Assembly (NCBI RefSeq): GCF_046119375.1
Contig: NW_027362769.1
Span: 360,344,001 to 360,408,000, forward strand
Reading direction: 5' to 3'
Length of the DNA: 64,000 bases
Source of the DNA: Phyllobates terribilis
Lineage: Eukaryota
In this document: piece after piece, positions 7,363-37,642 of the stretch
How positions within the stretch are numbered: position 1 is the first letter of the stretch
Layout: the number at the start of each line of letters is the position of its first letter
Notes under the pieces: model-generated
Told to the model about the DNA's origin: nothing
The model's database searches: none
Seen by the model: only the letters and a program-made list of their open reading frames with translations
Made by a program: the position numbers and the translations under genes

Positions 7363-7744
7363 ATGCCTGATCCCGCCAAGTCTGCGCCAGCGCCCAAGAA
7401 GGGCTCCAAGAAAGCCGTCACTAAGACTCAGAAGAAGGACGGCAAGAAACTTAGGAAGAGCAGGAAGGAGAGCTACGCCATCTACGTGTACAAGGTGCTG
7501 AAGCAGGTCCACCCTGACACCGGCATCTCCTCCAAGGCCATGGGCATCATGAACTACTCTGTCAACGACATCTTCGGGCTCATCGCATGGGGAATCCTCC
7601 CGCCTGGCTCACTACAACAAGCGCTTCACCATCACGTCCCGAGAGATCCAGACCGCCGTGCACCTGCTGCTGCCCGGAAAGCTGGCCAAGCACGCCGTGT
7701 ACGAGGGCACCAAGGCCGTCACCAAATACATCAGCGCCAAGTGA
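7363..7744 (+). pseudogene. H2B: Histone H2B pseudogene (+1 frameshift)
   Basis: [17 protein letters not shown]... is canonical up to about codon 75. An extra T at 7588 (GCA T GGG GAA) shifts the frame; the shifted frame continues ...LAKHAV...TKY.SAK to TGA at 7742-7744 (382 bp = 381+1). Also missense changes such as SF>YS and ER>GL. Confidence 0.95.
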
Positions 7745-7778
7745 TCTGCTTCGTCTGCTGCTCCGCCATCACCCCAAA

Positions 7779-7822
7779 GGCTCTTCTGAGAGCCACCACC
7801 GCGTCTACATCAGAGCTGTGGC
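7779..7822 (+). terminator. Histone stem-loop plus a single HDE of the H2B pseudogene
   Basis: GGCTCTTCTGAGAGCC at 7779-7794; AGAGCTGTGGC at 7812-7822. Confidence 0.9.
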
Positions 7823-8183
7823 TGCTTCTGTGTTCTCTCCCGTCTCCCCGAGTTGTCTGGCCACATAGCCCGGGTCTCTGTCTAGTGACAGGGTAAATAG
7901 CAGGTGGCCCAAGTAGAAATGAAGGCTAAGGGCTAACGAAGAAGATGGCGAAAAAACTGGGGCTGCTTTTGGGTTCTCCTTCACAGCTCAGCACTTTCAC
8001 CAATGCCCTTGTGATTTCAGATGGAAGTTCAGTAACTTATTTAAGCCCTTGCTCCTCAGATCTGACTCCTTTTGGTCTCATTCCTATTTTAGGAATTGAT
8101 TCGGTTTAGTTTCTCTAAATAATGAAATTACTTCACTATTTTATGAAAGGTGATTACATGAGATTGTGGTCGGTGGAGTTTAT

Positions 8184-14667: not shown

Positions 14668-15570
14668 ATAGTAAAGGTCGCCTGATGGCCCTATAAAAAT
14701 AGGCTTTGCGACTTTCAGAGTCCCTCCTTCATAAATTAAACAGGATGTGTCTGATCATGTCTCACACACCACATGGCCACATATGGTTGTAAAATGTTAA
14801 AATGACATTTCCCAATGAATGCATTTGTCATGTTTGAAAGCAATGCAAAAGTGCAATAACGCATGAAAAACGCTACGTGTGATCATAGCCCAAGGTGTGG
14901 AGGAGTATTTTTGGTTTTGGTTATTTATTTTGCCTTATATACAAGTCATTACCCTGGAAAGGATGTTCCTTAACATATTTGACAGGAAAATGCATTTTGG
15001 TTTAGTTTTTGTATGTTTTATTGTGAGTCCGTAAAAGTGGCGTAATACCTCTGACAACGTTGTTGACACCAGTGACCTGGGAGTCCGAAATGCTGTTCCC
15101 ATAACATTTGAACACTGTTTCCATCGATGTGGGCAATTTTTAGGCCCTCTGCAGACTTGCGGGGGGAGCCACCTGAAAAATGCTCGAGTTTCCCATAGAC
15201 TTACATTGTGCTCGTTGCTCGGGTCGAGCACCCAAGTATTCCAATGTGCTCGACCCGAACAACGAGCTGCCGAGCATTTTAGTGCTCGCCCATCACTAGT
15301 GAGCTGTTATTAATAGGCTGGGAAGATTCATGGATAGTGAGCCCTTCCCGGCATAATAACACCAGACCCCAGCTGTCTGCTTTCCCTAAGCTGATTAAGA
15401 AAAATGAGGAGGACACCACGCCATTTTTTCTTTCTTTACTAGTTAAATACATGTACAGTAAGCTACACACGCACTGCGCTAATTATATATCTCACTGATT
15501 TCTTTCTATCTATTCTATGCATATATCTAGTCTATCTATTCTATTCTGACGGGTCACACTGTGCATATAC

Positions 15571-16024
15571 ACTCATGGTCTGTGTGCCGATTTTTTTCTC
15601 GCACCCACTGCTTTGCATTGCTGAGTCTCGTCCGATATATGCGGCCACTCGCAGCATGCTGAGATTTTTTCTCCGTCCAATTCGAGCTGAGAAAAAAATC
15701 ACAGATGAACACAATCATTCAATAACATTAGTCAGAGTGCAATCCAATTTTTTATTGAATTACACTCGTCCGATTTAAATGCAGATGACTATGAGCCCTT
15801 TGGGTTCGCTCACATCTATGTGTAAATCCGGCGATTCCAATGTGAGAAAAAAAAATTGCATTACACTTGCACCAACGTGATTCAATAAGGCAGTGTTCAT
15901 CTGTGAGATTTTTTCGTCAGGGGGAAATGGGTTGAGTAAAAAAATTGCAGCATGCGAACGCCTGAGACTCACCAATGCAAGTCAATGGGTGCGAAAAAAA
16001 AAACGGACGGCACACGGACCATGA
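15571..16024. mobile_element. Hairpin-like MITE
   Basis: Long imperfect terminal inverted repeats CTCATGGTCTGTGTGCCG...CGCACCCA...GAGTCTC and the reverse complement, with further internal inverted segments. No ORF. Confidence 0.65.
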
Positions 16025-16835
16025 GTACTCCGTCCTTTTTTTCTCGCACACATCTCAGTAAAGACAGGAAATGTCATCAGCCAAGTACAATAAATCCACA
16101 GCAAAACCCTTAGAATAGATAGATAGATATCCTGTAGATATTTAATGTCACAAGCCCCCTACATATAATAAAGTAGCACTCTTTAGTGCCCTTCATATGA
16201 TACTAAAGGGTGTCTAGGCTTATTTAACCTATTTAATAAAAAATAGTCTAAAAAAAATGACGTGGGGCCTCCCTATTTTTAATAACCAGCCAAAAGACAG
16301 CAGACAGCTGTTGGTAAGGAGACAATTTCCATGCACCTTTCCAGCCTATTAATATCAGCCCCCAGCTGTCTTCTTTGCCTCTGCTGGTTGTTAAAAATGG
16401 GGTAAACCTAAAAAAATGACGTGGGGACTCCCTATTTTTAATAACCAGCCAAGTGACAGCAGACAGCTGTTGGTAAGGGGACAATTTCCATGCACCTTTC
16501 CAGCCTATTAATATCATGGATATTGTAGTAAAGATCCCTGTGATGGTGACAAGAGCCGGGAATAGGAGGAACGAGCTCCCGCAGCAGTTTTATCTCCCCG
16601 GATACACAGTGATGCGCAGATCGGGAGGACGGGGGTGATGATCCCGGGACCTCCTCTCGGCTCTTTCCCGGCATCTCTGCTGGTGACGGCTACAAACGGT
16701 CAGTGGAGATGATGGAGAAGAGGAAGCGACGGAGAAAGCGCGCTCTGCTGTCCGGTGTTAGCCGGTAAAGGGCTTTTATCCCGGGCAGGGAAGCACAAGG
16801 GGAGAGCGGAGCTTCACTCGGGCTCAGCTGGGAGG

Positions 16836-16926
16836 AGGCGGGGCCTGTGCTCAGTGTCAGCCAATAGATGCTCAGGACGATGCTGCTCATCAGCCAATCA
16901 GTGCGCAGTAAGCCTGTACATATAAC
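16836..16926 (+). promoter_or_regulatory. H1 promoter
   Basis: GC box near 16836, CCAAT at 16861 and 16894, TATAA at 16921-16925 (about 70 nt upstream of the ATG). Confidence 0.75.
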
Positions 16927-16996
16927 AGGCGCCTCCAGCTCCGGCCTCAGTGTTTTCCTATCAGGAGATATTTGTGTTCTAGTTCCGCAGCACACG

Positions 16997-17641
16997 ATGG
17001 CCGAGACCGCACCAGCCGCCGCTCCCCCTCCCGCAGAACCGGCCGCCAAATCCAAGAAGCAGCCGAAGAAGTCCCCCGCCGGGGGCGCCAAGAAAAGCAA
17101 GAAACCCTCCGGTCCCAGCGTCGCCGATCTGATCGTGAAAGCCGTGTCCGCCTCTAAGGAGCGCAGTGGGGTGTCTCTGGCCGCCCTGAAGAAGGCTCTG
17201 TCTGCCGGAGGATACGATGTAGAGAAGAACAACAGCCGCCTGAAGCTGGCCGTCAAGTCTCTGGTCACCAAGGGCGCCCTCCTCCAGGTGAAGGGCAGCG
17301 GCGCCTCCGGGTCCTTCAAGCTGAACAAGAAGCAGCAGGAGACTAAGGACAAAGCGGCCAAGAAGAAGTCAGCAGCTGCGGCCAAGCCCAAGAAACCCGC
17401 TGTAGCCAAGAAAGCCGCCAAGTCTCCGAAAAAACCCAAGAAGGCTCCGACCGCGGCCAAGAAGAGCCCGAAAAAGGCCAAGAAGCCCGCAGCAGCGGCC
17501 AAGAGCCCCAAGAAGCCAAAGGCCGCTCCGAAGCCCAAGAAGGTGATGAAGAGTCCGGCTAAGAAAGCTGCTAAACCCAAAGCTGCCAAGAGTCCTGCTA
17601 AGAAGGCAGCTAAAGCCAAGAAGCCCGCAGCTAAGAAATAA
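16997..17641 (+). CDS. H1: Linker histone H1 (214 aa), replication-dependent somatic type
   Basis: [18 protein letters not shown]..., globular domain [46 protein letters not shown]...[14 protein letters not shown], and a Lys/Ala/Pro tail with SPKK motifs. Intronless, with stem-loop. The in-frame ATG at 16868 lies upstream of the TATA box and is not used here. Confidence 0.97.
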
Positions 17642-17671
17642 GCCAAAACCGCCCTGTTATTACCCCACAAA

Positions 17672-17687
17672 GGCTCTTTTCAGAGCC
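17672..17687 (+). terminator. Histone 3' stem-loop (H1)
   Basis: AAAGGCTCTTTTCAGAGCCACCAC. Confidence 0.97.
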
Positions 17688-18428
17688 ACCACCTTGTCCC
17701 CTTCCGAGTTGTATGATCAGTGCCACCACCTTGTCCCCTGCAGAGCTGTATGATCAGTGCCACCACCTTGTTCCCTGCAGAGCTGTATGATAAGATCCAC
17801 CACCTTGTCCCCTGCAGAGCTGTATGATCAGTGCAACCACCTTGTACCCGGCAGCGCTGTATGATCAGTGCCACCACCTTGTCGCCGGCAGAGCTGTATG
17901 ATCAGTGCCATCACCTTGTCCCCGGCTGAGCTGTATGATCAGTGCCATCATCTTGTCCCCGGCAGACCTGTATTATAAGTGCCACCACCTTGTCCCCGGC
18001 AGAGCTGTATGATCAGTGCCACCACCTTGTCCCCTGCAGAACTGTATGATCAGTGCCATCATCTTGTCCCCGGCAGAGCTGTATGATCAGTGCCACCACC
18101 TTGTCCCCGGCACAGCTGTATGATCAGAGCCACCACCTTGTCCCCGGCATAGCTGTATGATCAGAGACACCACCTTGTCCCCGGCATAGCTGTATGATCA
18201 GAGCCACCACCTTGTCCCCTGCAGAGCTGTATGATCAGAGCCACCACCTTGTCCCCTGCAGAGCTGTATGATCAGTGCCATCACCTTGTCGCCGGCAGAG
18301 CTGTATGATCAGTGCCACCACCTTGTCCCCTGCAGAGCTGTATGATCAGTGCTACCACCTTGTCCCCGGCAGAGCTGTATGATCAGTGCCATCACCTTGT
18401 CCCCGGCTGAGCTGTATGATCAGTGCCC
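17684..18428 (+). repeat. 37-bp minisatellite x20 built from the H1 post-stem-loop/HDE segment
   Basis: Unit TGCCACCACCTTGTCCCCTGCAGAGCTGTATGATCAG; GATCAG-type motif from 17715 to 18418 at a 37-bp period. Confidence 0.96.
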
Positions 18429-18844
18429 GTATATCCTGCCGCTTCTAGATTATAGTGTTTTCATGGAGCGGCTCCAGTGTTATAATGAATAAGCTTTTCC
18501 CCACATCTCCGCATAGAGCTGCGCTGTGTCCCGATCACACCAGTGCAGGTGACCGATCAGTGTAATCAATGGAGGGAAGGGGCCGATGTCCTACAGAAAT
18601 CTACATCATCCTAATCAATCACCACTTGTAACCTGCGTCTTTATTAGTGAAAGGATTAGTGTGCGGTTATTACTTCGATGTGAGAATTGGAGAACCAGTG
18701 ATTTGACTGATGATAGAGTAGACCCTGTACAGCTCAGTGACATCGGCGGCTCCTGCTGTAGAAGCCGCATGTAGACATGGTGTGACCCTGTGCCAGTATC
18801 CGCAGCCAGAAAAGAGAGAACAGAGACCCTGCCCCTCTTTTTGA

Positions 18845-19459
<615 letters not shown>

Positions 19460-19490
19460 ATCCGTCCTACACGTCTGACTATAACACAAA

Positions 19491-19532
19491 GGCTCTTTTC
19501 AGAGCCACCAAATCCTCCATAATAACGAGCTG
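19491..19532 (+). terminator. Histone 3' stem-loop plus a single HDE (H3)
   Basis: GGCTCTTTTCAGAGCC at 19491-19506; ACGAGCTG at about 19524-19531. Confidence 0.93.
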
Positions 19533-20254
19533 ATCCCTCACATCTGCTTCATATTCTGCTGAGTATTCACTTGTGCTCAGTAACATCAGGGGCGCTCAGT
19601 TCTCTTCTCAGTCTGCAGTTGGTATCTGGGGGGATTATTCCCTCCAATGCAGTTATAAGGGTGTGTAGAAATGATCTGATGACTACACGAAGTACATTCT
19701 ACTCATTCAACCACTTAATATTCGTATCCCCACTAGTTTTCGCACCGATCCTGCCGCACATCCAATAATATCAGCTTTATATAATGTATTAGGAGTCTGG
19801 ACTGTGTTTTGAAGGAATAAATGCGCAGATTTCTTGGTGTATATGATGCGATCATTATAGGACGTCCATTATCCAGCGCTATCTCCTGTGAACACTCGCT
19901 GACTCCTATCAGCCGCACGGGTCTGATCCTGGAAACGTATCAGGGTTAAGAGACTAATATCCTCTGCAGCTCTGTAGTAGGTTTATCTAGATAATATTAA
20001 CCTACATTTTATAAAATCCCCGCCTCCTTCTTTCAAAGTTCTCTGTAAACTGCAGTATCTCGTTTCTTTATATTCCCGGCACTCGGAATATTGCTGGTGT
20101 GATGGAGTCACCATTGTTAGAATCAGTTCTGCACTTTGTGTTATAGAAAGCGGATACTTTTCCCTCGATCCTGGAAATGATAGAAATTCCTGTATGGAAC
20201 CAAGAGACCATTGATCGCTCAACACAAGCAAATTTCCTGATATCCGACCGTCCT

Positions 20255-20421
20255 GAAACCACGTGATCCAGAAGGACAAAGAACAGAAAAAGCCATCAGC
20301 CCCTGAGCGGGAACTTCCTATTCGGTAACTATTAACATTAGCTCCTCCCCTTCCTCTGCTGATTGGCTGAACACAGGACGTTAGGGAGTTTGAATTTCCC
20401 GCTCCTTGTAGTTTCCGCAGC
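20255..20421 (-). promoter_or_regulatory. Dispersed copy of an H4-promoter-like module (E2F-like GCGGGAAA, CCAAT, E-box)
   Basis: The reverse complement of 20336-20421 closely matches 21336-21422. The reverse complement of 20255-20421 also matches 29041-29170. Confidence 0.55.
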
Positions 20422-21335
20422 TTCTACATGTAATTGTGTTACTACTTCTGCTGTGAAGAGAAGTGTCCGGTCTATAGATAAACTCCACTGAGCACATTCA
20501 TGTAATCACCTTCCAGATCACAGTGTATTCTCCATTGGATATGGGACCACTGGAATGAGAATCAATCAGCTGCTCAGTGATTATGTTATTTATACGGTTC
20601 CTTTTTTATTTGCCCAATCTGAGCTGTTGTCATTATCTTCTACAGGAAGATAACAAATGTTCTCTAAGTGCAAATCCTCAAATGAAGAAACAAGTGATAT
20701 CTGAGTTTTATGATCTCTGTCAATTACAATACAAGTGTTATTAGGAGAAAGTAAATATTGTCATTTCTGATGAGCGGAAAATCCCAGTGGTGGCAAAATA
20801 TTAAGAGTATCTGAGCAGTGCTGCTGACCGCGGCTTCCTCCCTGCACTGTCCTTAGAAGAGGCAATAATCCTGGCTGCCACAATCCTCCTCTGATCGTGT
20901 CCAGGCATGGTCACATGCTGCTGCTCCTGGCAAATCACCGCACCCCAAGAGCAATTCTATCAGAAGTGACAAGCCCGTTTTGGAAACGTCACAGAGCTCA
21001 GTCAGGATCCTATAGATTAGTCACCGGGAGCAGCCAGAATGTCACATGTATTAATACATGTAGATTGTACAGAATGAAGCCATGGCAAGGGATGATGAGG
21101 GGAGTAGTAAGATGCGGAAATGACCATGGAGATGTGAATAGCATGTTAGGAATATGCTGGTATGATGGAAGTGGGGGTTAATCACTGTCAGTGCCGCTAT
21201 CTGTATATTCAGCAGTGATCTGATGCTTCTACTCAGCTTCATCTCACTTGCAGGAGGTTGGTGTCGTGTCTGCCCTTTTATTTATGGACTGTATCTGACA
21301 CATTTCTCATCACAGGGAAAAGATATATATTAGAC

Positions 21336-21857
<522 letters not shown>

Positions 21858-21889
21858 TTGTATTCTCTGCTCCATCCTGACAACCCAAA

Positions 21890-21905
21890 GGCTCTTTTCA
21901 GAGCC
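21890..21905 (+). terminator. Histone 3' stem-loop (H4)
   Basis: AAAGGCTCTTTTCAGAGCCACCAC. Confidence 0.96.
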
Positions 21906-22171
21906 ACCACATCTTCTAAGTGAGAGGCTACAATCTCCTGTTGCTGTGCCGGGAGCTGATCTCTACTGTGCACTGGTGATCTCTGTATTCTGGCTGGTGG
22001 ATCGCTCAGGTGTCCGGTTCTCATCAGTGTAAGTTTTGTTCTTCCCATATTGTGGAGAACGGCGGACAGTGATTCTATCACTAGTGAGATAACACTGATC
22101 CGCGGTTACTACAGAACATTGGATCCAGGTCCTGCAGTGAGAAGAGTGTGACTACTACATATTTCCACATC

Positions 22172-24950
22172 AGATTATTATTATAGCGCCATTTATTCCA
22201 TGGCACTTTACATGTGAAGAAGGGGTATACATTAAGAGCAATTACAATAATCTTGAACTCCATGTGACTGCGACTGGTACAGGAGGAGCGAGGACCCTGC
22301 CTGCGATGGCTCAGTCTACAAGGGATGGGTGAGGATACAGTAGGTGAGGGTAGAGCTGGTCGTACAGCATTATTTGTGGAGTGGTGGTTACTGCAGGTTG
22401 TAGGCTTGTCGTAAGAGTGGGTCTTCACGCTCTTTTTGAAGGTTTCCACGGTGGACGAGAGCCTGATGTGTTGGGGTAGAGAGTTCCAGAGTAGGGGAGA
22501 CGCACGGGAGAAATCTTGTATGTGATTGTGGGAAGGGGCGATAAGAGGGGAGCAGAGAAGGAGATCTTGTGAGGATCAGAGGTTGCGTGCGGGTATGTTG
22601 CGGTAGAGTAGGCAAGATATATGTGGAGGAGACAGGTTGTGAATGGCTTTGTGTGTCATGGTTAGGGATTTTAACTGGAGTCTCTGGGCAATGGGGAGCC
22701 AGTGAAGAGATTGACAGAGAGGAGAGGCTGGGGGAAAAGTGGATTAGTCAATGGGCAGCCATTGACGTTGATAGGTCAGTTGGGGGGGTTGAATGAGATG
22801 GCGGAAAGATGATGAATTCTGTTTTGTCCATGTTAAGTTTTAGAAATCTAGCAGAGAAGAAGGATGAAATAGCAGACAGACATTGTGGGATTTTGGTTAG
22901 TAAGGAGGTGATATCAGGTCCAGAGAGGCAGATCTGTGTGTCGTCAGCATAGAGGTGATAATGAAAGCCATGAGACTCTATGAGCTGTCCCAGGCCTAAG
23001 GTGTAGATGGAGATGAGCAGGGGTCCTAGAACTGAACCTTTGGGAACACGGACAGATAGGGGGTGAGATGAGGAGATGGTCTGTGAGTGAGAGACACTGA
23101 ATGTCCTGTCTGTTAGATATGAGGAGATCCAGGATAGGGCCCAGTTTGTGATCCCGAGAGATGAGAGTTTTTAGTAAGAGGGAATGGTCCACTGTGTCAA
23201 AGGCAGATGACAGGTCTAAGAGGAGGAGGACAGAATAGTGTCGCTTATATTTGGCGGTTAGTAGGTCGTTGGTAACTTTGGTCAGTGCAGTTTCAGTAGA
23301 ATGGTGCGGTCGGAAACCAGATTGTAGGTGGTCGAAGAGGGAGCAGGAGGAGAGGTGGGAGGACAGCTCAGAATGGACGTGTTGTTCCAGTAGTTTTGAG
23401 CCATAGGGGAGAAGTGATATGGGGCGATAGCTAGACAGAGGATGGGTCAAGGGAGGGCTTTTTGAGGATGGGTGTGATTGAGGCATGTTTGAAGCATGAG
23501 GGTAAGACACCAGTTGTTAGTGACAAGTTGAAGAGGAGGGATAGCGCTGGGATGAAGATAGTGGTAAGGTTTGGGATGAGGTGGGACGGGATTGGGTCAA
23601 GTTTACAGGTGGTGAGGTGTGATTTGGAAAGCAAAGAGGAAAGTTGATCTTCCGTAATGGTGGAGAGTGTGGTTTTGAAGGAGGAAGGTTGAGTAGGTGT
23701 GGGGAGGGGCTGTGGGGGCTTTAGGCAAAAGCTTTGTCTGATGGTGTCAATCTTCTGTTTGAAGAATGAGGCAAAGTCTTCGGCTGAAATAAGAGGAGAG
23801 GAAGGAGGCACTGGGGGACGGAGGAGAGAATTGAAGGTGTTGAATAGTTGTTTGGGGTTATGAGAGATGTGAAGTATGTTTGCTTTGCTGCAGTGAGTGT
23901 GGACTTGAAGGTAGTGAGAGACTGTTTGAATGCGATGAAGTGCTCATTGGAGTGGGACCTTTTCCATCTACGATCAGCAACCCTGGAGGCTCTTCGCAGT
24001 TCTTTAGTTAGGCTGGTGTGCAAGGGTTGTCTGTTTATTGTGCGGACTTTGGTATGTGTGAGGGGGTCGACCGAATCGAGAGCTGCAGCTGTTGTGGTGT
24101 TGTATAAAGTGGCTGCAACATCTGCATCATGTAAGGAACTAATGTCTGTAAGAAGGAGAAGGGATTCAGAGAGTGAGTGTAGGTCAAGGTGTTTGAGATT
24201 TCGGCGAGGGTATGCAAGTTTGTGAAGTGGGGATTGTTGCCCTGGAGAGGAGAGGGTAGAGAATGTAAGTAGGTTGTGGCAGAGAGAGGGAGAGGTGAGT
24301 TAGAGAGGTTAGATGGGGAACAGAGGCTGGAGAAGATAAGGTCCAGCGTGTGGCCGTCTTTGTGGGTGGGTGTGGAAGACCACTGGGTAAGACCAAAGGA
24401 GGAAGTGAGGGATTGAAGCTTAGAGGCGGCTGAGAGGGAAGTGTCAATGGGGATGTTGAAGTCACCCATGAGGATAGTGGGGATGTCAAAGGAGAGGAAA
24501 TGAAGTAGCCAAGTGGTGAAGTGGTCAAATAAAGTGGTGGCTGATCCTGGGGGGTGGTAGATGACAGCCAGTTGGAGGGGGAGTAGATGCGCACGCAGTG
24601 CACTTCAAAAGAGGGGAGAGAAATTGAGGGTGGCAGTGGAATATGGGCGAAGGAGCAGTTATCTAAGAGGAGGAAACCTATTCCTCCACCCTGCTTGCCG
24701 GTGGGGCGAGGGGTATGGGAGAGGTGGAATCCGCCATACGAAAGTGCAGCAGGAGAGGCCGTGTCAGAGGGGGTGAGCCAGGTTTCAGTGATGCCGAGGA
24801 AGGAAAGCTTGTTGGTGATGAAGAGGTCGTGAATGTAGGAAAGTTTGTTGCAGACGGAGCGAGCGTTCCATAGAGCTCCTGTTAGGGGGATTGGGGAAGC
24901 GGGGGCTGGGCGGATGGGTATAAGGTTAGAACGGTTATGAGAGTTTGGGA
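22172..24950 (-). mobile_element. Degenerate L2/CR1-clade LINE (APE endonuclease + RT), same family as 2300-4560
   Basis: Minus strand reads GALWNARSVCNK...GITETWL, MGDFNIP...[54 protein letters not shown]. Shares the 3' tail CCATGGAATAAATGGCGCTATAATAATAAT. Internal deletion near 22750 and several frameshifts. Confidence 0.93.
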
Positions 24951-26439
24951 TAGATCGTCGGTAGGAGGTGGAAGTGACTGTGGGGATGTGGTGAGGATCT
25001 CTAGCTCCAGTGACTCCACATTCTCTAGGTTTCCCGGATTAGGGGAGCAGTATTCACTGATGGAAGACTCGGGGTTCAGCGACGCTCTGGTCACTGGTTG
25101 ATGCATATAGTGTAGTCGCTCTATCCAGATGCTGGGATGTGCCCTGTGTGATCTGGAGACTGGTATCCTTTTCGGCAGATTGCAGCACATTCAGTTTTGT
25201 GGACAAAGATCCTGACCAGGGAAGACTAACCTGCCTTTCCAATTGGATCCCTTTCTTGAATTACGCCCCCACCTCCAATGGGGAGTTCGTTTTTTTTCTC
25301 TGTATAAAAACCTAAGATTCTGCAGTTATTGGGCCCTGATTAGCACCAGGCTCAGTGTATATGCAGTGTACGAGATCCTTTGTGCGGCTGCCTGTAATAT
25401 TGGTAGCTGTTACGGCCTGGGACGTGTCTGTTATACACTCCTGACATGTGCTGGTGTGTCTGCTCCGCAGTCTTTCACTTCTGGAGCTGACACCGCTGAC
25501 TTTGGGTGATGTGATGTGTCTTCTTATGGATCTATAACAAATATTACACACATTGGATGCGGGGGAGTGGTGATACATATAGCTCTGTGCACACAGCTCA
25601 TACCCTGCTGTGATGCGATTATCACAGAACAGAAATCCAAGTCTTGCCATGAGATGAATGTGTTGATTCTGCTACATGATATTTTTTCAGATCAGTGTAG
25701 GATGCAGCGAATATTCACTGCATGAGGCAGCTGGATAGATGGCCGCCCTGTGTACCCGGTATGTAGACTCCAATGTGATGACCGCGGATCTGTTTAGCCA
25801 ATGAGTAGGAACCAGATATAAGGGTTTCCTCCTCCGTTTAACTCCTTAGTGGCCGTGTGTCTGCTGATCACACACATGCTTTACTCAAGCGACTCCTTCC
25901 CCCACTACAGACCCGCAGCGCTCACATCAGGCTCCTGGTAGAACATGAGAGACTTGTCTTAGTCTGTGGTGGGATCGGAACCGACACCACAGGGAATCCG
26001 CAAAGAATAATACGCGGGTGAGTGAGGAGCCTCCTGCACGTGTAGATGGAGCGGAGAAGCATCAGATCACTGCTGAATATACAGATAACGGCACTGATTG
26101 GAATTAACCCCCTCTCCCCCTACATGAGGATTGTGTGGAGCTCAGAAAACCCAGGCAAAATAATCGTCCAATTTATAGGTTTTATGGAATAAAAAACATA
26201 ATGACTGGACTCCATGCTTAATCTTCCCCTACGGAAATATTTACCAGTCATCCCTTGTACACTGCTGAATATACTAGATCACTGCACCATCACCACACCA
26301 GTAACAAGTAGCAGGATCGACCTGTGCATTTAATGCTTCTACTCTATAGTAAACAATGTATCGTGTAGTTCTATCTGACGCTGCAGGGGATGGTTCTCTT
26401 ATCCACCAGCGGTGCCGGCTCTGATGAGGAGGATGTGGT

Positions 26440-26455
26440 GGCTCTTAGAAGAGCC
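26440..26455 (-). terminator. Histone 3' stem-loop (H2A copy 2)
   Basis: Minus strand AAAGGCTCTTCTAAGAGCCACCAC, followed by ATCAGAGCC. Confidence 0.93.
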
Positions 26456-26489
26456 TTTGGTTGTTCGGACAGATGTGGAGGAGCGGCGC

Positions 26490-27577
<1,088 letters not shown>

Positions 27578-27611
27578 NNNNNTCCGTCTGCTGCTCCGTC
27601 ATCACCCCAAA

Positions 27612-27627
27612 GGCTCTTCTAAGAGCC
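27612..27627 (+). terminator. Histone 3' stem-loop (H2B copy 2)
   Basis: AAAGGCTCTTCTAAGAGCCACCAC. Confidence 0.95.
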
Positions 27628-27631
27628 ACCA

Positions 27632-28719
27632 CCCCGTCTACATCAGAGCTGTGGCTGCTCCTGTGTCCTCTCCCGTCTCCATCAGAGCTGTGGCTGCTCT
27701 TGTGTCCTCTCCCGTCTCCATCAGAGCTGTGGCTGCTCTTGTGTCCTCTCCCGTCTCCATCAGAGCTGTGGCTGCTCTTGTGTCCTCTCCCGTCTCCATC
27801 AGAGCTGTGGCTGCTCCTGTGTCCTCCCGTCTCCATCAGAGCTGTGGCTGCTCTTGTGTCCTCTCCCGTCTCCATCAGAGCTGTGGCTGCTCTTGTGTCC
27901 TCTCCCGTCTCCATCAGAGCTGTGGCTGCTCCTGTGTCCTCTCCCGTCTCCATCAGAGCTGTGGCTGCTCCTGTGTCCTCTCCCGTCTCCATCAGAGCTG
28001 TGGCTGCTCCTGTGTCCTCTCCCGTCTCCATCAGAGCTGTGGCTGCTCCTGTGTCCTCTCCCGTCTCCATCAGAGCTGTGGCTGCTCCTGTGTCCTCTCC
28101 CGTCTCCATCAGAGCTGTGGCTGCTCCTGTGTCCTCTCCCGTCTCCATCAGAGCTGTGGCTGCTCCTGTGTCCTCTCCCGTCTCCATCAGAGCGGTGGCT
28201 GCTCCTGTGTCCTCTCCCATCTACATCAGAGCGGTGGCTGCTCCTGTGTCCTCTCCCATCTACATCGGAGCTGTGGCTGCTCCTGTGTCCTCTCCCGTCT
28301 CCATCAGAGCTGTGGCTGCTCCTGTGTCCTCTCCCGTCTACATCAGGGCTGTGGCTGCTCCTGTGTCCTCTCCCGTCTCCATCAGAGCGGTGGCTGCTCC
28401 TGTGTCCTCTCCCATCTACATCAGAGCGGTGGCTGCTCCTGTGTCCTCTCCCATCTACATCGGAGCTGTGGCTGCTCCTGTGTCCTCTCCCGTCTCCATC
28501 AGAGCTGTGGCTGCTCCTGTGTCCTCTCCCGTCTACATCAGGGCTGTGGCTGCTCCTGTGTCCTCTCCCGTCTCCATCAGAGCTGTGGCTGCTCCTGTGT
28601 CCTCTCCCGTCTACATCAGAGCTGTGGCTGCTCCTGTGTCCTCTGCCGTCTACATCAGAGCTGTGGCTGCTCCTGTGTCCTCTCCCGTCTACATCGGAGC
28701 TGTGGCTGCTCCTGTGTTC
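27632..28719 (+). repeat. 39-bp minisatellite x28 built from the H2B HDE segment
   Basis: Unit CTGTGTCCTCTCCCGTCTCCATCAGAGCTGTGGCTGCTC; ATCAGAGC-type motif from 27642 to 28693. One unit has a 2-bp deletion. A 5-unit (195-bp) block is duplicated at 28186 and 28381. Confidence 0.96.
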
Positions 28720-29040
28720 TGTCTATTCACAGGGTAAATGGCAGGGGGCGCTAGTAGAGCTGATTAACCCTTTCTAGACTGATAGTGAAACCTATGAATG
28801 AGTCCTTCACAGCTCTGATCCTTTCAGTAATCTTATGAGCGAGTTGTCCTGTGTTCAGTGGCTTTTTACTCTACCCCTTGCTCCTCAGATCTGATATTCC
28901 GGGGTCTCCTCCATCCGGTATAACATGATTCGTTTAGTTCATGTTTCTCCGAATAACATGAGACATTTGTGTAGATTTTATCTATAATTCCGGACACTTC
29001 TTTTCACAGCGCAAGAAATTACATCATTACATTTAGAAGT

Positions 29041-29170
29041 TGTGGAAACTACAATGAGCGGGAAATTCATAATCCGCAGAGGAAGAGGAGGAGCTAATGT
29101 TACCAATGGGTGAATTCCCGCTCAGTGCTTGATGGATTTTCTGTTCCTTGTCTTCATATAACACGTGGTC
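29041..29170 (+). promoter_or_regulatory. Third copy of the E2F-like/CCAAT/E-box module
   Basis: GGAAACTACAATGAGCGGGAAATTCA...GCAGAGGAAGAGGAGGAGCTAATG...CCAAT...TTCCCGCTCAG...CACGTG. Confidence 0.5.
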
Positions 29171-29551
29171 CTATGTCGGGCCGATATCGGGAACACCTGC
29201 ATGTGTGCAGCGATTATTCCTCGTTTACATCATACAGGAGTCTGTAGAGTTTCGGGATTAGGGCAGCAGATCTTTCTCTTCAGTACATTGCATCACAATC
29301 ACTATTGTGGAGGACTATATACTGATCGGGGATTTATCCTACAAGAGACATTTCTAGAAAGATCAATTCTACTTTCCCATGCAGATCTCATTATGTCTCC
29401 CCGATCATCTCCTCAGCAGTTTTCCAGTAATCCATTTACAGATCAATTCTACAGCTAAAGGCAGGAGGTTTGTGACAGGACACGTACGATTGTGGATTGC
29501 AGATTGCTGAGAGTTCATTGCTCAAAACATTACACTCTGCTGTCAGGAGCC

Positions 29552-29623
29552 TATAGGTCAGGCATGCAGTATAGGTCAGGCATGCAGTATAGGTCAGGCA
29601 TGCAGTATAGGTCAGGCATGCAG
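29552..29623. repeat. 18-bp tandem repeat x4
   Basis: TATAGGTCAGGCATGCAG x4. Confidence 0.92.
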
Positions 29624-30014
29624 TTAGATCCTCAGTCATCACATCCTCCTCAGGAGATTCTTTCCTGCTCAGGTACTGATCGCTCTTCAGCTCTTTCTCT
29701 TGTCCTCTCCCTCTTTATCCACTGACACTGAACTTGGGCCCCGTCTCCTCCCAACAGAGAGAAGCTCCGCATTCCAGTTGTGCTTCCCTGCCGGATACTG
29801 TCTGTCGTACAGAAAGCGGATTGTACGATGTGGAGACGATCTGGAGCTGCTGAGACCCCAGAAGGGTAACACAGGCGATGGCCTCCGCTGACTGCCACCT
29901 CCCTGACCTGTAATATAAGTACACCCCACTATTGTGCAAAAGGTGAACTACTGAGAGAAGACACAAAATGAAGCGTCTACACATAGAGCACAGCTGTATA
30001 TAGTGCACAGACTG

Positions 30015-30017
<3 letters not shown>

Positions 30018-30052
<35 letters not shown>

Positions 30053-30195
30053 CAATGTGTATAGTATATAGAGCAGCCTGTACAGTATATAGAGCTGCCT
30101 GTACAGTATATAGAGCTGTGTGTACAGTATATAGAGCTGCCTGTACAGTATATAGAGCTGCCTGTACAGTATATAGAGCAGTGTGTACAGTATAT
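30018..30195. repeat. (TA)16 microsatellite followed by about 7 units of the 21-bp satellite (detached left end of the large array)
   Basis: TA run at 30018-30049, then CAGTATATAGAGC(A/T)G(CC/TG)TGTA units to 30195. Confidence 0.92.
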
Positions 30196-30378
30196 TACTA
30201 ATTTAAACCCAACTAACCTCCCAAACCCCCCAAATCACCCAATCCAACCCCTGATGACTATTGAAGTCACACAACCTATAGCCACTCCCACCACTTTAAA
30301 TAATAGATTTGACATTCTAGAAACTATTAATGAATCTCCATTCAACGAGGAAGACCAACCAGACATGGCCTCCAATAA

Positions 30379-32393
30379 CACCCCCAAGAGACAAAGTCGC
30401 GATAGTAACCCCAGACACCCACAAGTACGCAAGAAAACCAGCTCCTCAAATTTTTTTCAGAAGGCACAAAAAACAAACGTAAGAGGGGAGGTAGAGGAGG
30501 GCAACTCTCCAAAAAGAAAAAGGCAGATACAGAAGAGATAAACCAAAAAGCCGACACTATCTTCAATCTCAGTAAACATACCCTAAAACCAAACGAAATC
30601 AACCTCCTAACTAAAGGTCTTAAATATGCCCCCTCCACAGGATTCAATAAATTTCAAGCTTTCATTGGAGTCAAACAGTTTATGCGAAAACTAGCACTCA
30701 AAAAATACTACCTGAAACATCAGGACCGTGGGCACATAAATGAACCTAGAAACTCACTCACTTTGAAATATGCCCACACCAACTTAAAAACCAAATCCAA
30801 ATTCCATCCATTAAACGAATACTCATCTGCACTCGAAAGTTTTCAAAACAATGTCATCTCAGATATCCGTAAATTAAGCCACAAAAAATGTAACAAATTC
30901 CAATACAACCTTAACGCCTCTGAGAGGAAAGCAATATATATCTTACAGAAAAATCAGAACATAATTATCCGTACAGCTGATAAAGGAGGTGGTATAGTTA
31001 TACTAGATCTAGAACAATATCAATCAGAAACAAACAGACTACTAAGTGACACAAGAACATACAATACTATGAGGGAGGACCCCACAGATATGTACCTAAA
31101 AGAACTAAAAACACTAACTACCAAAGGACTAGATAAAGGCTTCCTTACGAAACAGGAGTTTGAATACATCACTATCTCCCACCCACGTCTTGCAACATTT
31201 TATTATCTACCAAAAATACATAAGTCACTCTCCCATCCTCCAGGCAGACCTATCATCTCAGGTATCCAAAGCCTAACATCAAATCTATCCAGATTTGTGG
31301 ATAAACACTTACAAGACCTAGTACCCCTTTTGCCGACATATTTAAAAGACAGTCAACATGTACTTCAGCTTTTACAAAAAATCAAATGGCATGACAATTT
31401 CATCCTAGGCACCCTGGACATCTCGTCCTTATACACCGTGATTCAGCATAATGCGGGCTGCGACGCAGCCACACATTTTCTTTTGAAACAAAACAAACTA
31501 CCTAAAGAACAAATAATGTTCATGAAGGAATGTATGAAGTTCATACTGACACATAATTATTTTAAACACGATAAACTTTTCTACACACAACAATGGGGCA
31601 CAGCAATGGGTACTAGATTTGCCCCAAGCTATGCCAATCTATACGTTGGCAAATGGGAGAAGTTAGCTATCCACCCAGGCGGAACACTCAGACCTAACTT
31701 GGTATTTTGGCATAGATTTATTGACGACGTACTTTTTATCTGGTCTGGTGACCAAGAATCCCTAGACTCCTTTATCAGGGAGATCAATATCAATAACTTT
31801 TTCTTGGAATTTACCTCCAACATAAGCCAAAAACAGGTAAACTTCTTAGATCTCAACATATATATCCAAGATCAAAAAATCCATACAAAAACATATATGA
31901 AGCCAACGGACTCAAATAGCTTCATCTCTCTGGACAGCTGTCACCTCCCCAGCTGGCTGTTAAACATCCCACGCAGTCAATACTTGAGATTATATAGAAA
32001 TTGCTCCAACACTGGGGACTTCAACGAAGAAGCCATACAATTAACAAATAAATTTTTAGAAAAAGGTTACAATCCACAATTTTTACAAAAAGTGAAAAAT
32101 CAGATTCAAACTATACCCAGAGATAACCTCCTCAAGAACAGCACCACAAAAATTAATGCCACTGACCCTACAACACAACCAGATATCCCTATCATAACTC
32201 AATACAACTCCAATACATATTTATTAAGAAAAATAATTTCAAAACACTGGCATATCCTTCACGATGACAAAACAATAGGCGACCTTATTCCACCAAAACC
32301 AAGATTCATCTATAGGAAAGCAAAAAACCTAGGGAACCTCATCGCACCAACAGTTCGCAATCCTCAAATCATTAATCAACCCACACTCATTAA
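30379..32393 (+). pseudogene. Penelope-like element RT ORF, 5' part (stop-free up to the insertion)
   Basis: Frame is open from 30379. Contains IFNLS...LLTKGLKYAP, IRTADKGGGIVILD, FYYLPKIHK...PPGRPIISG, LDISSLYT, GTAMGTRFAPSYANL, RFIDD, VNFLDL. The track's C-terminal 88 aa are read-through into the inserted element. Confidence 0.92.
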
Positions 32394-33871
32394 CCCCTTA
32401 ATAACATCTGACGTACTAATACGCGTCTGTGCCCTGGGACTTAAGAGCCAGACCCGTATTAGTACGTCATCGCGATCGCGCGCGCACACAGGCTGTGCGG
32501 GCGCGATCGCCGCCGGGTGTCAGCTGATTGTCACAGCTGACACCCGGTACTATGTGCAGGGAGCGGTCCTGCACCGCTCCCAGCACATTAACCCCCGCGA
32601 TGCTGCGATCGAAGTCGATCGAAGTCGATCTCGGCATTGCGGGGGCAAGGGGAGGTGATTGGCGATACTCACCTCCTCTTCCGGCTTCCAGCGCAGTCTG
32701 CAAAGGCTTCCCGGGTGTTGCCATGACGACCCGATGTCGTCATGACAACATCCGGGTCACCAGAGAGCAGGAAGATTGCTTGGACATGCGCAGTGCATCT
32801 CCAAGCAATCTTCACACTGTGCATTTCTGACAGCCTTCATGGCATAGGAATGGTGCTCCATTCCTGTGCCATGCAGGCGATCAAAAAAAAAAAAGTGAAA
32901 GTCTCAGAGTGGGACAAAGTAATAAAGTGTATAAACTGTGTAAAAGTGGAAAAAAAAAAATGTGCAAAAATATTATAAAAAAATAAAAAAAATAATACAC
33001 CAAAAATAAAAATATAATGTACCCATCAATAAATATTATTATAAAAATTATTATTATAAAAAAAAACCAATAAAAGTACACATATTTGGTATCGCCGCGT
33101 CCGGAAAAACCTGACCTATAAAACTGTCCCACTAGTTAACCCCTTCAGTGAACACGGTAAAAAAAAAAAAAAAACGAAGCAAAAAACAATGCTTTATCAC
33201 CATACCGCCAAACAAAAAGTGGAATAACACGCGATCAAAAAGACGCATATAAATAAAAATGAAACCGCTGAAAACGTCATTTCGTCCCGCAAAAAACAAG
33301 CCTCCATACAGCTCCATCAGCCGAAAAATAAAAAAGTTATAGCTCTCAGAATAAAGCGATACTAAAAAATATTTTTTTCTATAAAATAGCTTTTATTGTG
33401 TATAAGCGCCAAAACATAGAAAAATGATACAAATGTGGTACCGCTGTAAACGTACTGACCCGAAGAATAAATCTACCTCATCAATTTTACCACACGCGGA
33501 ACAGAATAAAAAAAAAAAAAAAAAAAACAATTCCTGAATTGTTGGTTTTTGTTTATTCTGCCTCCCAAAAATCGGAATAGAAAGCGATCAAAAAATGTCA
33601 CGTGCCTGAAAATGGCACCAATAACAACGTCAAGTCATCCCGGAAAAAACGAGCCGTCACATGACTGTCTGCCAAAATCTGGAAAAATTATAGCTCTCAA
33701 AATATGGCGATGCAAAAACTAGATTTTACAAAAAATGCGTCTTTTAGTGTGTGACAGCTGTCAGTCATAAAAACCCCATATGATTCTGGCATTGCTGTAA
33801 TCACACCGACCCGAAGAATAAAGTCTTCTAATCACTTATACCGCACAAGGAACGGCGTCAAAAATAAACTC

Positions 33872-34338: not shown

Positions 34339-34439
34339 ATGACAACTTATTCAATATGATGACCTAATGTAAACAAATTCTGTGCCGTACCTCTGGGTTC
34401 AAAATGTTCACTATACACCTTAATAAAATCGTTGAGGGG

Positions 34440-36765
34440 TATAGTTTCCAAAATGGGGACACTTGTGGGGGAGCTCCACTGTTTAGGCACATCACGGGCT
34501 CTCCAAACGCGACATGGTGTCCGCTAACAAATTGAATGGAAAATCGTCTCAAATTGTTAGCGGACGCCATGTTGCGTTTGGAGAGCCCCTGTGTGCCCAA
34601 ACATTGGAGCTCCCCCACAAGTGACCCCATTTTGGAAACTAGACGCCCTAAGGCACCTTTCTAGATGCATAGTGAGCACTTGGAATCCCCAGGTGCTTCA
34701 CAAATTGATTCGTAAAAATGAAAAAGTGAAAAAAAAAACACTTTTTCATTTTTATGAATCAATTTGTGAAGCACCTGGGGTTCCAAGTGCTCACTATGAA
34801 TCTAGATAGGTGCCTTGGGGGGTCTAGTTTCCAAAATGGGGTCACTTGTGGGGGAGCTCCAATGTTTGGGCACGCAGGGACTCTCTAAATGCAACATGGT
34901 ATCCGCTAACAAATTGAATGGAAAATCGGCTCAAATTGTTAGCGGACACCACATTGCGTTTGGAGAGCCCCTCTGTGCCCAAACTTTGGAGCTCCCCCAC
35001 AAGTGACCCCATTTTGGAAACTAGACCCCCCAAGGCACCTTTCTAGATGCATAGTGAGCACTTGGAACCCCCAGGTGCTTCACAAATTGATTCGTAATAA
35101 TGAAAAAGTGAAAAAAAAAACACTTTTTCATTTTTATGAATCAATTTGTGAAGCACCTGGGGTTCCAAGTGCTCACTATGAATCTAGATAGGTGCCTTGG
35201 GGGGTCTAGTTTCCAAAATGGGGTCACTTGTGGGGGAGCTCTAATGTTTGGGCACACAGGGACTCTCCAAATGCAACATGATATCCGCTAACAAATTGTC
35301 GGCTCAAATTGTTAGCGGATATCATGTTGCATTTGGAGAGTCCCTGTGTGCCCAAACATTGAAGCTCCCCCACAAGTGACCCCATTTTGGAAACTAGACC
35401 CTCCAAGGCACCTATCTAGATGCATAGTGAGCACTTGGAACCCCAGGTGCTTCACAAATTGATTCATAAAAATGAAAAAGTGTTTTTTTTTTCACTTTTT
35501 CATTATTACAAATCAATTTGTGAAGCACCTGGGGGTTCCAAGTGCTCACTATGCATCTAAAAAGGTGCCTTGGGGGGTCTAGTTTCCAAAATGGGGTCAC
35601 TTGTGGGGGAGCTCCGAAGTTTGGGCACAGAGGGGCTCTCCAAACGCAATGTGGTGTCCGCTAACAATTTGAGCCGATTTTCCATTCAATTTGTTAGCGG
35701 ATACCATGTTGCATTTAGAGAGTCCCTGTGTACCCAAACATTGGAGCTCACCCACAAGTGACCCCATTTTGGAAACTAGACCCCCCAAGGCACCTATCTA
35801 GATGCATAGTGAGCACTTGGAACCCCTAGGTGCTTCCCCAATTGATTCGTAAAAATGAAAAAGTGTTTTTTTTTTCACTTTTTCATTATTACGAATCAAT
35901 TTGTGAAGCACCTGGGGGTTCCAAGTGCTCACTATGCATATAGAAAGGTGCCTTAGGGGGTCTAGTTTCCAAAATGAGGTCAATTGTGGGGGAGCTCCAA
36001 AGTTTGGGCACAGAGGGGCTCTCCAAACGCAATGTGGTGTCCGCTAACAATTTGAGCCGATTTTCCATTCAATTTGTTAGCGGATACCATGTTGCATTTA
36101 GAGAGTCCCTGTGTGCCCAAACATTGGAGCTCCCCCATAAGTGACCCCATTTTGGAAATTAGACCCCCCAAGGCACCTATCTAGATGCATAGTGAGCAAT
36201 TGGAACCCCTAGGTGCTTCACAAATTGATTCGTAAAAATGAAAAAGTGTTTTTTTTTTCGCTTTTTCATTATTACGAATCAATTTGTGAAGCACCTGGGG
36301 GTTCCAAGTGCTCACTATGCATCTAGAAAGGTGCCTTGGGGGGTCTAGTTTCCAAAATGGGGTCACTTGTGGGGGAGCTCCAAAGTTTGGGCACAGAGGG
36401 GCTCTCCAAACGCAATGTGATGTCCGCTAACAATTTGAGCCGATTTTCCATTCAATTTGTTAGCGGATACCATGTTGCATTTAGAGAGTCCCTGTGTGCC
36501 CAAACATTGGAGCTCCCCCACAAGTGACCCCATTTTGGAAACTAGACCCCCCAAGGCACCTAACTAGATGCATAGTGAGCAGTTGGAACCCCCAGGTGCT
36601 TCACAAATTGATTCGTAACAATGAAAAAGTGTTTTTTTTTTCACTTTTTCATTTTTACAAATCAATTTGTGAAGCACCTGGGGGTTGCAACTGCTCACTA
36701 TGCATCTAGATAGGTGCCTTGGGGGGTCTAGTTTCCAAAATGGGGTCACTTGTGGGGGAGCTCCA
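34440..36765. repeat. About 382-bp tandem array of alternating hairpin modules with an internal orientation switch
   Basis: CTAGTTTCCAAAATGGGGTCACTTGTGGGGGAGCTC at about 34824, 35206, 35580, 35963, 36346 and 36727, with its reverse complement between each pair. Confidence 0.88.
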
Positions 36766-37642
36766 ATGTTTGGGCATACAGGGGCTCTCTAAACGCAACA
36801 TGGTGTCCGCTAATTATTCAAGCAAATTTTACAATCAAAAAGTCAAATGGCGCTCCTTCCCTTCCGAGCCCTACAGTGCGCCCAAACAGTGTTTTTTCCC
36901 CAAATATTGGGTATCTGCGTGCCCAGGGGAAATTGCACAACAAATATTGCGGACCATTTTTTCTTGTTACCCCTGTGAAAATTAAAAAAATTGGGTCTAA
37001 AGTAACATTTTTGTGAAAAAAGTTAAATGTTCATTTTTTTCTTCCACATTCAAAAAATTCCTATGAAGCACCTGAAGGGTTAATAAAGTTCTTGAATGTG
37101 GTTTTGAGCACCTTGAGGGGTGCAGTTTTTAGAATGGTGTCACTTTTGGGTATTTTCTGTCATAAAGACCTCTCAAAGTGACTTCAAATGTGATGTGGTC
37201 CCTAAAAAAATGGTTTTGTAAATTTTGTTGGAAAAATGAGAAATCGCTGGTCAACTTTTAACCCTTATAGCTCTCTAACAAAAAAAAATTTTGGTTCCAA
37301 AATTGTGCTGATGTAAAGTAGACATGTGGGAAATGTTATTTATTAACTCTTTTGTGTGACATATCGCTCTGATTTCAGGGCTTAAAAATTCAAATTTTGA
37401 AAATTGCAAAATTTTCAAAATTTTCGCCAAATTTCCATTTTTTTCACAAATAAACGCAAGTGATATCGAAGACATTTTTCCACAATCATGAAGTACAATA
37501 TGTCACGAAAAAACAATCTCAGAATCAGGGGGATCCGTTGAAGCGTTCCAGAGTAATTAACTCATAAAGTGACAGTGGTCAGAATTGTAAAAATTGGCCC
37601 GGTCATTAACGTGCAAACCACCCGCGGGGCTTAAGGGGTTAA

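What the first reader, a model, noticed from the sequence alone, without database searches (positions are those of the whole stretch)
27632..28719. Independent, convergent HDE amplification behind H2B (39 bp x28); the paralogue shows the unexpanded state
Seen: a unit unrelated to the H1 repeat except for the shared CAGAGCTGT core also starts directly after a stem-loop. The pseudogenic H2B copy has the same segment once plus a degenerate partial (7795-7880), and both loci rejoin homologous flank (CAGGGTAAAT at about 7890 and 28730). The expansion is therefore specific to this copy. AGAGCUGUGGC could pair with U7 over 11 nt including two G-U pairs. Unlike the H1 unit, distal units have no adenine in the stretch where cleavage would fall, and cleavage prefers to follow an A. 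Inference: these units would bind U7 but be cut poorly (decoy or scaffold). Two independent expansions at the same functional position in one cluster suggest either selection or a mutational hotspot tied to 3' processing or termination.
Basis: partly seen in the sequence, partly recalled or inferred. Interest (0 to 1): 0.8.

Follow-up and report, generated by a model that had tools for sequence, protein, structure and literature searches.

The report
Repeat array grown from H2B cutting signal
Right behind a frog histone H2B gene, the short signal that docks the U7 RNA-cutting particle has been copied 28 times in a row; this is real, but it belongs to a repeat family found behind many H2B copies and looks like ordinary drifting repeat DNA, not a working device.

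Summary
A 39-bp unit repeated 28 times (27633-28722) starts 5 nt after the H2B stem-loop. Unit 1 is the gene's own spacer plus histone downstream element (HDE). The frameshifted H2B paralogue has one unit plus a degenerate second one. The H1 array shares only the 9-nt core CAGAGCTGT with it.

The claim that the expansion is specific to this copy fails. In two independent DNA runs, unit words are about 16-230 times deeper than the H2B 3'UTR, which is itself multicopy. Several different array junctions exist. Runs under five organism labels hold the words. Earlier scan notes list H2B arrays of 16-62 units elsewhere in this genome, so the scan has found this family before on other DNA.

The unit pairs well with a mammalian-type U7 5' end (-18.8 kcal/mol). 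However, the pairing stretch varies as much as the rest of the unit, 9 of 28 units carry a core change, and a 195-bp block of five units is exactly duplicated.

Best reading: a neutral minisatellite in which only unit 1 works. Two arrays at stem-loops in one window is non-random (P about 8e-4), which hints at a local mutational bias. A decoy or scaffold role is untested. I found no paper describing HDE-derived repeats.

The parts
27108..27297 (+). H2B promoter (octamer ATTTGCAT at 27108, TATA at 27123), 5'UTR and first 34 codons from the ATG at 27197. The rest of the coding sequence (27298-27582) is masked.
   Evidence: The ATG-to-stem-loop distance is 415 nt, against 416 nt in the frameshifted paralogue. 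That is consistent with an open frame but not shown.
27612..27631 (+). Histone 3' stem-loop (27612-27627) plus ACCA, the expected cleavage site
   Evidence: the hairpin is in the predicted fold
27633..27671 (+). Unit 1: the gene's own spacer plus HDE. AGAGCTGTGGC lies at 27645-27655, 13 nt after ACCA.
   Evidence: It is 93% identical to the corresponding segment of the paralogue.
27633..28722 (+). 39-bp minisatellite of 28 units. 19 units have an intact 11-nt U7-pairing stretch.
28177..28566 (+). Two exactly identical 195-bp blocks of five variant units (units 15-19 equal units 20-24): a higher-order duplication
28723..28950 (+). Downstream flank that rejoins the paralogue (CAGGGTAAAT at 28730). 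Homology fades to about 60%.
7363..7898 (+). Paralogous frameshifted H2B (7363-7744), stem-loop 7779-7794, single unit 7801-7839, degenerate second unit about 7840-7880, and rejoin motif at 7889
17672..18427 (+). H1 stem-loop and the independent 37-bp x 20 array. Its unit spans the 3' stem arm, ACCA, the spacer and the HDE.
26490..26864 (-). Divergent partner H2A gene. The reading frame is open but carries an 18-nt in-frame deletion (AGNDAR missing) relative to the other copy.

Best explanation
This is a minisatellite (VNTR) that grew out of the H2B pre-mRNA 3'-processing region.

Origin. The ancestral flank already held two adjacent copies of a roughly 39-bp segment: the spacer after the cleavage site, the U7-pairing HDE, and 16 nt downstream. 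The frameshifted paralogue still shows this state. Unequal exchange or replication slippage then expanded the segment. The 195-bp five-unit duplication is a trace of that process.

Distribution. The array is one member of a family that sits behind many H2B copies of a very large, tandemly repeated histone cluster, with different copy numbers. The family is shared with related species.

Function. Only unit 1, at the right distance from the stem-loop, is expected to act as the gene's HDE. Units 2-28 have no stem-loop and no A at the ruler position, and they drift freely. They are most likely passengers that are at most transcribed briefly by read-through and then degraded.

Recurrence. The same kind of growth behind H1 is best explained by a mutational bias at histone 3' ends in a genome very prone to tandem arrays.

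Shown versus inferred. Shown: the anatomy, the origin from the HDE segment, independence from the H1 array, abundance, and the lack of detectable constraint. Inferred: neutrality, the mechanism of expansion and the hotspot.
For: - Array anatomy and register.
- Unit 1 equals the spacer plus HDE of the gene and is 93% identical to the paralogue's single unit.
- The paralogue's second segment is a degenerate unit colinear with the last unit plus flank.
- Five-unit exact duplication.
- Variation is not depleted in the U7-pairing stretch: 3/11 against 6/28 variable sites, p = 0.69; mean diversity 0.054 against 0.045. Nine of 28 units carry a core change, and T18G weakens the predicted duplex from -18.8 to -14.1 kcal/mol.
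- Unit word depth is 10,500-32,000 against 138-664 for the 3'UTR in two DNA runs. There are several alternative junctions, including arrays not preceded by this stem-loop.
- Five organism labels hold the words. A 69-nt contig from organism B fits a closed 39-bp cycle if the contigs were built with 31-letter words (39 + 30), which I infer.
- Half of the window is tandem arrays, including one inside a dead H2A gene.
- Earlier notes report the same family with 16-62 units.
Against: - With 28 units, many identical by descent, the constraint test has little power.
- Two of the three core variants (A13G, A15G) keep pairing with U7 as G-U pairs (-18.8 and -17.9 kcal/mol).
- The H2B unit is the best U7 partner among all seven HDEs in the window.
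- Arrays start at stem-loops more often than random placement gives (P about 8e-4), which selection could also explain.
- Strong HDE-U7 duplexes can support cleavage without SLBP in extracts (PMC7026596), so distal units are not necessarily inert.
- A run guessed to be RNA holds the unit (depth 124) and the last unit plus flank (depth 62) in a ratio unlike the DNA runs.
Confidence: 0.72

Rival explanations
1. Selected function. The distal units, transcribed by read-through, bind U7 snRNP. They would act as fail-safe cleavage and termination sites, or as a decoy or scaffold that concentrates U7 snRNP at the histone locus.
For: - Predicted duplex of -18.8 kcal/mol with 11 contiguous pairs, the strongest in the window.
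- Substrates with strong duplexes are cleaved without SLBP in extracts (PMC7026596).
- Independent arrays at the same position behind H1 and H2B.
- The family persists across five organism labels.
Against: - No depletion of variation in the pairing stretch, and 9 of 28 units are altered there.
- There is no stem-loop and no A at the ruler position in distal units.
- The unit's HDE core can pair with GCTC(T/C)TGTG of the same unit.
- The partner H2A looks damaged.
- Copy number is reported to vary 16-62 among copies, as expected for drift.
Confidence: 0.1
2. Pure coincidence. The genome makes tandem arrays everywhere, and two of them happen to lie at histone 3' ends. There would be no hotspot and no selection.
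For: 49.6% of the window is tandem arrays, 12 arrays in all, one of them inside a dead H2A gene. The pattern was noticed post hoc.
Against: Random placement of the 12 arrays gives two or more at stem-loops in only 0.08% of trials. Earlier notes describe a further, different 48-bp array behind another H2B.
Confidence: 0.13
3. Assembly artefact next to the N-run.
For: Copy number could not be checked with long reads. Short-read contigs collapse the array.
Against: The N-run is deliberate masking. Independent DNA runs from other samples hold the stem-loop-to-unit and unit-to-flank junctions and the unit cycle at very high depth.
Confidence: 0.02

Closest known systems
Canonical histone pre-mRNA 3'-processing signal (stem-loop, ACCA, spacer, HDE pairing with the U7 snRNA 5' end; molecular-ruler cleavage by CPSF73)
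   Same: Unit 1 has every sequence feature at the right spacing. All units keep a core complementary to the U7 5' end as printed in PMC7026596.
   Different: Units 2-28 have no stem-loop and therefore no SLBP site, and no A where the ruler would place the cut. The element is repeated 28 times, which I found described nowhere.
Minisatellites / VNTRs that expand by slippage and unequal exchange
   Same: Head-to-tail 39-bp units, interspersed variant units, an exact five-unit higher-order duplication, and differing lengths at paralogous loci.
   Different: The seed is a defined RNA-processing element at a fixed position behind a gene. The same kind of growth occurred independently behind H1.
Satellite DNAs derived from parts of tandem multigene families, such as the 5S-rDNA-derived PcP190 satellite of frogs and the promoter-derived 60/81-bp repeats of the Xenopus rDNA spacer (from my own knowledge, not checked here)
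   Same: A piece of a tandemly repeated gene unit is itself amplified in tandem next to the genes.
   Different: Here the source is the histone downstream element. A function, as shown for the rDNA spacer enhancers, is not shown.
Newt histone clusters embedded in satellite DNA, with read-through transcription on lampbrush loops (Diaz et al. 1981 and Gall et al. 1981, seen only in reference lists; abstract of PMC2114352 for satellite 2)
   Same: Amphibian histone genes flanked by long tandem arrays that read-through from gene promoters may transcribe. This window also holds a 24-kb 21-bp satellite.
   Different: As I recall, newt satellite 1 is not derived from the processing signal. Transcription of the present array is not shown.

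Membership tests
Functional histone downstream element (HDE) | Purine-containing core complementary to the 5' end of U7 snRNA | tested here: met
   11 contiguous pairs (two G-U) and -18.8 kcal/mol with the mouse/human U7 5' end from PMC7026596. Only 2% of background 39-mers reach -14. The frog's own U7 was not available.
Functional histone downstream element (HDE) | Lies about 10-15 nt downstream of the cleavage site that follows an SLBP-binding stem-loop | tested here: not met
   Met for unit 1 only (13 nt after ACCA). Units 2-28 have no stem-loop upstream and no A at the ruler position.
Functional histone downstream element (HDE) | U7-dependent cleavage or U7 snRNP binding demonstrated | not testable with these tools
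   Needs a processing assay, CLIP or oocyte injection.
Minisatellite / VNTR | Head-to-tail units of about 10-100 bp with high identity | tested here: met
   39 bp x 27.9, 96% matches; 28 units in register.
Minisatellite / VNTR | Internal variant-unit pattern showing unequal exchange or block duplication | tested here: met
   28177-28371 is identical to 28372-28566.
Minisatellite / VNTR | Copy number differs among loci or individuals | tested here: inconclusive
   In the window, about 2 units against 28 units at the two paralogues. Several junction types appear in reads. The 16-62 units at other loci come only from unchecked earlier notes. No long reads were available.
Genome-wide repeat (satellite-like) family | Abundance far above that of the host gene | tested here: met
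   Summed word depth is 10,500-32,000 for the unit against 138-664 for the 3'UTR in two DNA runs of about 2,000 million letters. This is a rough measure, not a copy number.

The most novel reading that the evidence does not exclude
Histone 3' ends in this frog lineage have repeatedly turned their U7-docking element into arrays. Nascent read-through RNA from hundreds of such arrays would then work as a U7 snRNP sink or seed at the histone locus, or as serial stem-loop-independent cleavage and termination sites. That would make repeat number a tuner of histone mRNA 3'-end formation.
Probability: 0.08. Interest if true: 0.8.

Novelty: new member of a known kind. Interest (0 to 1): 0.35.

Why it matters
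If the arrays are neutral, they are a clean, datable example of how a minisatellite is born from a functional RNA-processing signal and spreads with a tandem gene family. They also matter practically: tens of thousands of perfect U7-complementary sites would confound motif-based annotation of histone 3' ends.

The independent origins behind H1 and H2B point to a testable mutational bias at histone gene 3' ends. If the arrays bind U7 snRNP in vivo, they would be a natural experiment on stem-loop-independent U7 recruitment and on the dosage of a scarce snRNP.

Tried and rejected
- **Laying reads on the whole array.** As the tool suggested, I laid only the 5' junction with seven units.
- **Masked letters.** One loose-end consensus lies in the masked stretch. 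I ignored it and did not use it.
- **RNA evidence.** Run X1 is only guessed to be RNA, and the tool states transcription is not shown. Its zero depth on the UTR means nothing, because human-like contigs are filtered out. I therefore make no claim of read-through.
- **Rfam.** At gathering score it finds only the H3 and H4 stem-loops and no U7 gene in the window. The other five stem-loops were found by pattern.
- **This frog's U7.** Earlier notes gave nothing.
- **Literature.** Five searches for HDE-derived repeats or histone-derived satellites found nothing relevant. Two search calls failed on term syntax.
- **Seeding by the shared AGAGC.** I considered that AGAGC, present in both the stem's 3' arm and the HDE 24 nt apart, seeds slippage. 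I rejected this because the periods are 39 and 37, not 24.
- **R-loop-prone G-rich RNA.** Rejected because the unit is 69% pyrimidine on the sense strand.
- **A nearby poly(A) signal.** The nearest AATAAA is at 30646, nearly 2 kb beyond the array.

Full report
**What is there**

The window holds a histone cluster with seven 3' stem-loops found by pattern (14 strand-wise matches against 0.06 expected):
- H2A (minus strand, 5673) and H2B (7779). Both are dead.
- H1 (17672), H3 (19491) and H4 (21890).
- A second divergent pair, H2A (minus strand, 26440) and H2B (27612).

Rfam at gathering score reports only the H3 and H4 stem-loops and no U7 gene. The only N-run (27298-27582) covers most of the second H2B coding sequence. 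It is masked on purpose, and I did not try to recover it.

**The observation**

Tandem Repeats Finder reports 27633-28717 with period 39, 27.9 copies, 96% matches and no indels. In register there are 28 units from 27633 to 28722; unit 5 lacks 2 nt.

The stem-loop at 27612-27627 is followed by ACCA, then by unit 1. The stretch AGAGCTGTGGC of unit 1 begins 13 nt after ACCA. The mouse H2a substrates printed in PMC7026596 show the same spacing. Unit 1 is therefore the gene's own spacer plus HDE, and the array starts at the cleavage site. A 24-nt probe from the non-HDE half of the unit matches 28 times in the array, once in the paralogue and nowhere else in the window.

**The paralogue**

The two H2A-H2B pairs align from about 6880-8110 to 26714-28950. 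Identity is 93% across the shared promoter and 93% across the 3'UTR, stem-loop and unit 1. It falls to about 60% in the downstream flank.

The first H2B is frameshifted. Behind its stem-loop lies one unit (7801-7839). Next comes a segment that aligns colinearly with the last unit plus flank of the array copy and resembles a unit better than all but 53 of 5000 shuffles. Both loci then share CAGGGTAAAT, at 7889 and 28730. The simplest history is an old two-copy proto-repeat that expanded in one lineage.

**Independence from the H1 array**

The H1 unit (37 bp x 20, 17680-18427) spans the 3' arm of the stem, ACCA, the spacer and the HDE. It shares CAGAGCTGT with the H2B unit. With that 9-mer masked, the rest of the two units aligns no better than shuffles (1053 of 2000 score at least as well). 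These are two separate amplifications.

**Not specific to this copy**

I laid contigs of four public runs on 27583-27905.

| Run | Word depth on 3'UTR | Word depth on unit |
|---|---|---|
| X2 (DNA, about 2,000 million letters) | 138-147 | about 24,700-32,200 |
| X4 (DNA, about 2,000 million letters) | 353-664 | about 10,500-23,900 |

The tool warns that these sums are not copy numbers. Still, a UTR at that depth is itself multicopy, and the unit is about 16-230 times deeper.

Loose ends show other contexts:
- The unit-to-flank junction.
- A 313-nt contig at depth 137.6 that runs from the UTR through one unit into the unexpanded, paralogue-type sequence.
- Two further kinds of array end.
- Arrays preceded by sequence other than this stem-loop.

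Words from 27590-27830 are held by runs under five organism labels. One run of organism B gives a 69-nt contig at depth 29. That length equals 39 + 30, which a closed 39-bp cycle would give if the contigs were assembled from 31-letter words. This is my inference from the 31-letter word index.

Earlier notes of this scan, which I could not check directly, list 39-bp arrays of 16, 22, 28, 29, 49 and 62 units behind other H2B copies. These lie up to 1.1 Mb upstream on the same piece. The notes also list a different 48-bp satellite behind another H2B, many H1 arrays, and the label 'poison frog'. Both the expanded and the unexpanded states are families, not single loci.

**U7 pairing**

I used the U7 5' end printed in PMC7026596; mouse and human differ only at nucleotide 1. 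Predicted duplex energies:

| Sequence | Energy (kcal/mol) |
|---|---|
| H2B unit (11 contiguous pairs, two G-U) | -18.8 |
| Variant A13G | -18.8 |
| Variant A15G | -17.9 |
| Variant T18G | -14.1 |
| H1 unit | -14.0 |
| The window's H1, H3, H4 and two H2A proximal HDE regions | -9.1 to -11.6 |
| Random 39-mers from non-repeat parts | mean -7.8; 2% at or below -14 |

The frog's own U7 is unknown to me.

The second claim also holds. Thirteen nt upstream of the core in distal units lies CCTCT|CCCGT, which has no A.

**Signs of selection**

There are nine variable sites in the 39-bp unit. Three of 11 lie in the pairing stretch and six of 28 lie elsewhere (Fisher p = 0.69). Mean diversity is 0.054 against 0.045. 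Nineteen of 28 units keep the 11-nt stretch.

Units 15-19 and 20-24 are identical 195-bp blocks that carry four core-altered units each. Damaged units are therefore copied along, as unequal exchange predicts. In the H1 array only 11 of 20 units keep AGAGCTGT.

Power is low, and two of the three core variants keep G-U pairing, so mild constraint is not excluded.

The array RNA is also predicted to fold locally, with the HDE core pairing to GCTC(T/C)TGTG of the same unit (z = -2.45).

The array-bearing gene has an intact promoter and N-terminus and the right length. Its partner H2A, however, lacks 18 nt coding AGNDAR.

**Chance or bias**

Half of the window (49.6%) is tandem arrays, 12 in all, one of them inside the dead H2A. 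Even so, random placement of these arrays puts two or more within -10 to +20 nt of a stem-loop end in only 0.08% of 300,000 trials. The mean was 0.042 against 2 observed.

This test is post hoc. With two independent origins it still points to a local bias. Its cause is my inference only. Possibilities include conflicts between heavy S-phase transcription and replication, or recombination at open chromatin of short genes.

**RNA**

A run guessed to be RNA holds a unit-cycle contig (depth 124) and an 865-nt contig of the last unit plus flank (depth 62). That ratio is unlike the one in the DNA runs. The tool states that transcription is not shown, contigs have no strand, and human-like contigs are filtered out. 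I draw no conclusion from this.

**Literature**

Five searches found no description of repeats derived from the HDE or of histone-derived satellites. PMC7026596 supports the background facts used here: the ruler mechanism, SLBP-independent cleavage with strong duplexes, and degradation of the downstream product.

**Verdict**

The array is a real and apparently undescribed kind of minisatellite, grown from the H2B processing signal and independent of the H1 one. It is one ordinary member of an abundant family that this scan has already met many times in this genome. Nothing indicates that the distal units work.

Noticed in passing
window 17688-17720 versus 17720-18427: The H1 gene's own proximal HDE reads CCGAGTTGT and pairs less well with a mammalian-type U7 (-10.8 kcal/mol) than the distal units of its array (GCAGAGCTGT, -14.0). 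The unit next to the gene is the degenerate one.
   Followed up: partly
window 26490-26864 (-): The H2A partner of the array-bearing H2B has an open frame but lacks 18 nt (AGNDAR in the histone fold). It also has V for G at residue 4 of SGRGKQ. It is probably not a working gene.
   Followed up: partly
window 5690-6990 (-): The other H2A is split by an insert of about 0.9 kb that contains 46-bp and 103-bp tandem arrays (6096-6445). Tandem arrays therefore also arise inside dead histone genes.
   Followed up: no
window 39823-63840 and 30044-30195: A 24-kb satellite of 21-bp units (TRF reports periods 42 and 63), plus a small related array. 176 of its units contain AGAGCTG, so a 7-mer HDE screen would flag an unrelated satellite.
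   Followed up: partly
window 1-1965 and 34432-36813: Two further large arrays: 43 bp x 46 (cut by the window start) and 383 bp x 6.2.
   Followed up: no
window 30682-32658 (+), 22944-24603 (-), 11165-12426 (-): Long ORFs that by eye look like retrotransposon reverse-transcriptase and hAT-type transposase remnants lie between the histone genes. They were not checked with any family search.
   Followed up: no
window 27633-28722: Within each unit, the HDE core can pair with GCTC(T/C)TGTG 7 nt downstream. The T-variant units 2-4, 6 and 7 make the better hairpin.
   Followed up: partly
window 28600-29400: Small runs guessed to be RNA hold about half of the words of the flank behind the array, but only 7-20% of the words of the stem-loop plus first units. 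I could not tell whether something in the flank is transcribed.
   Followed up: partly
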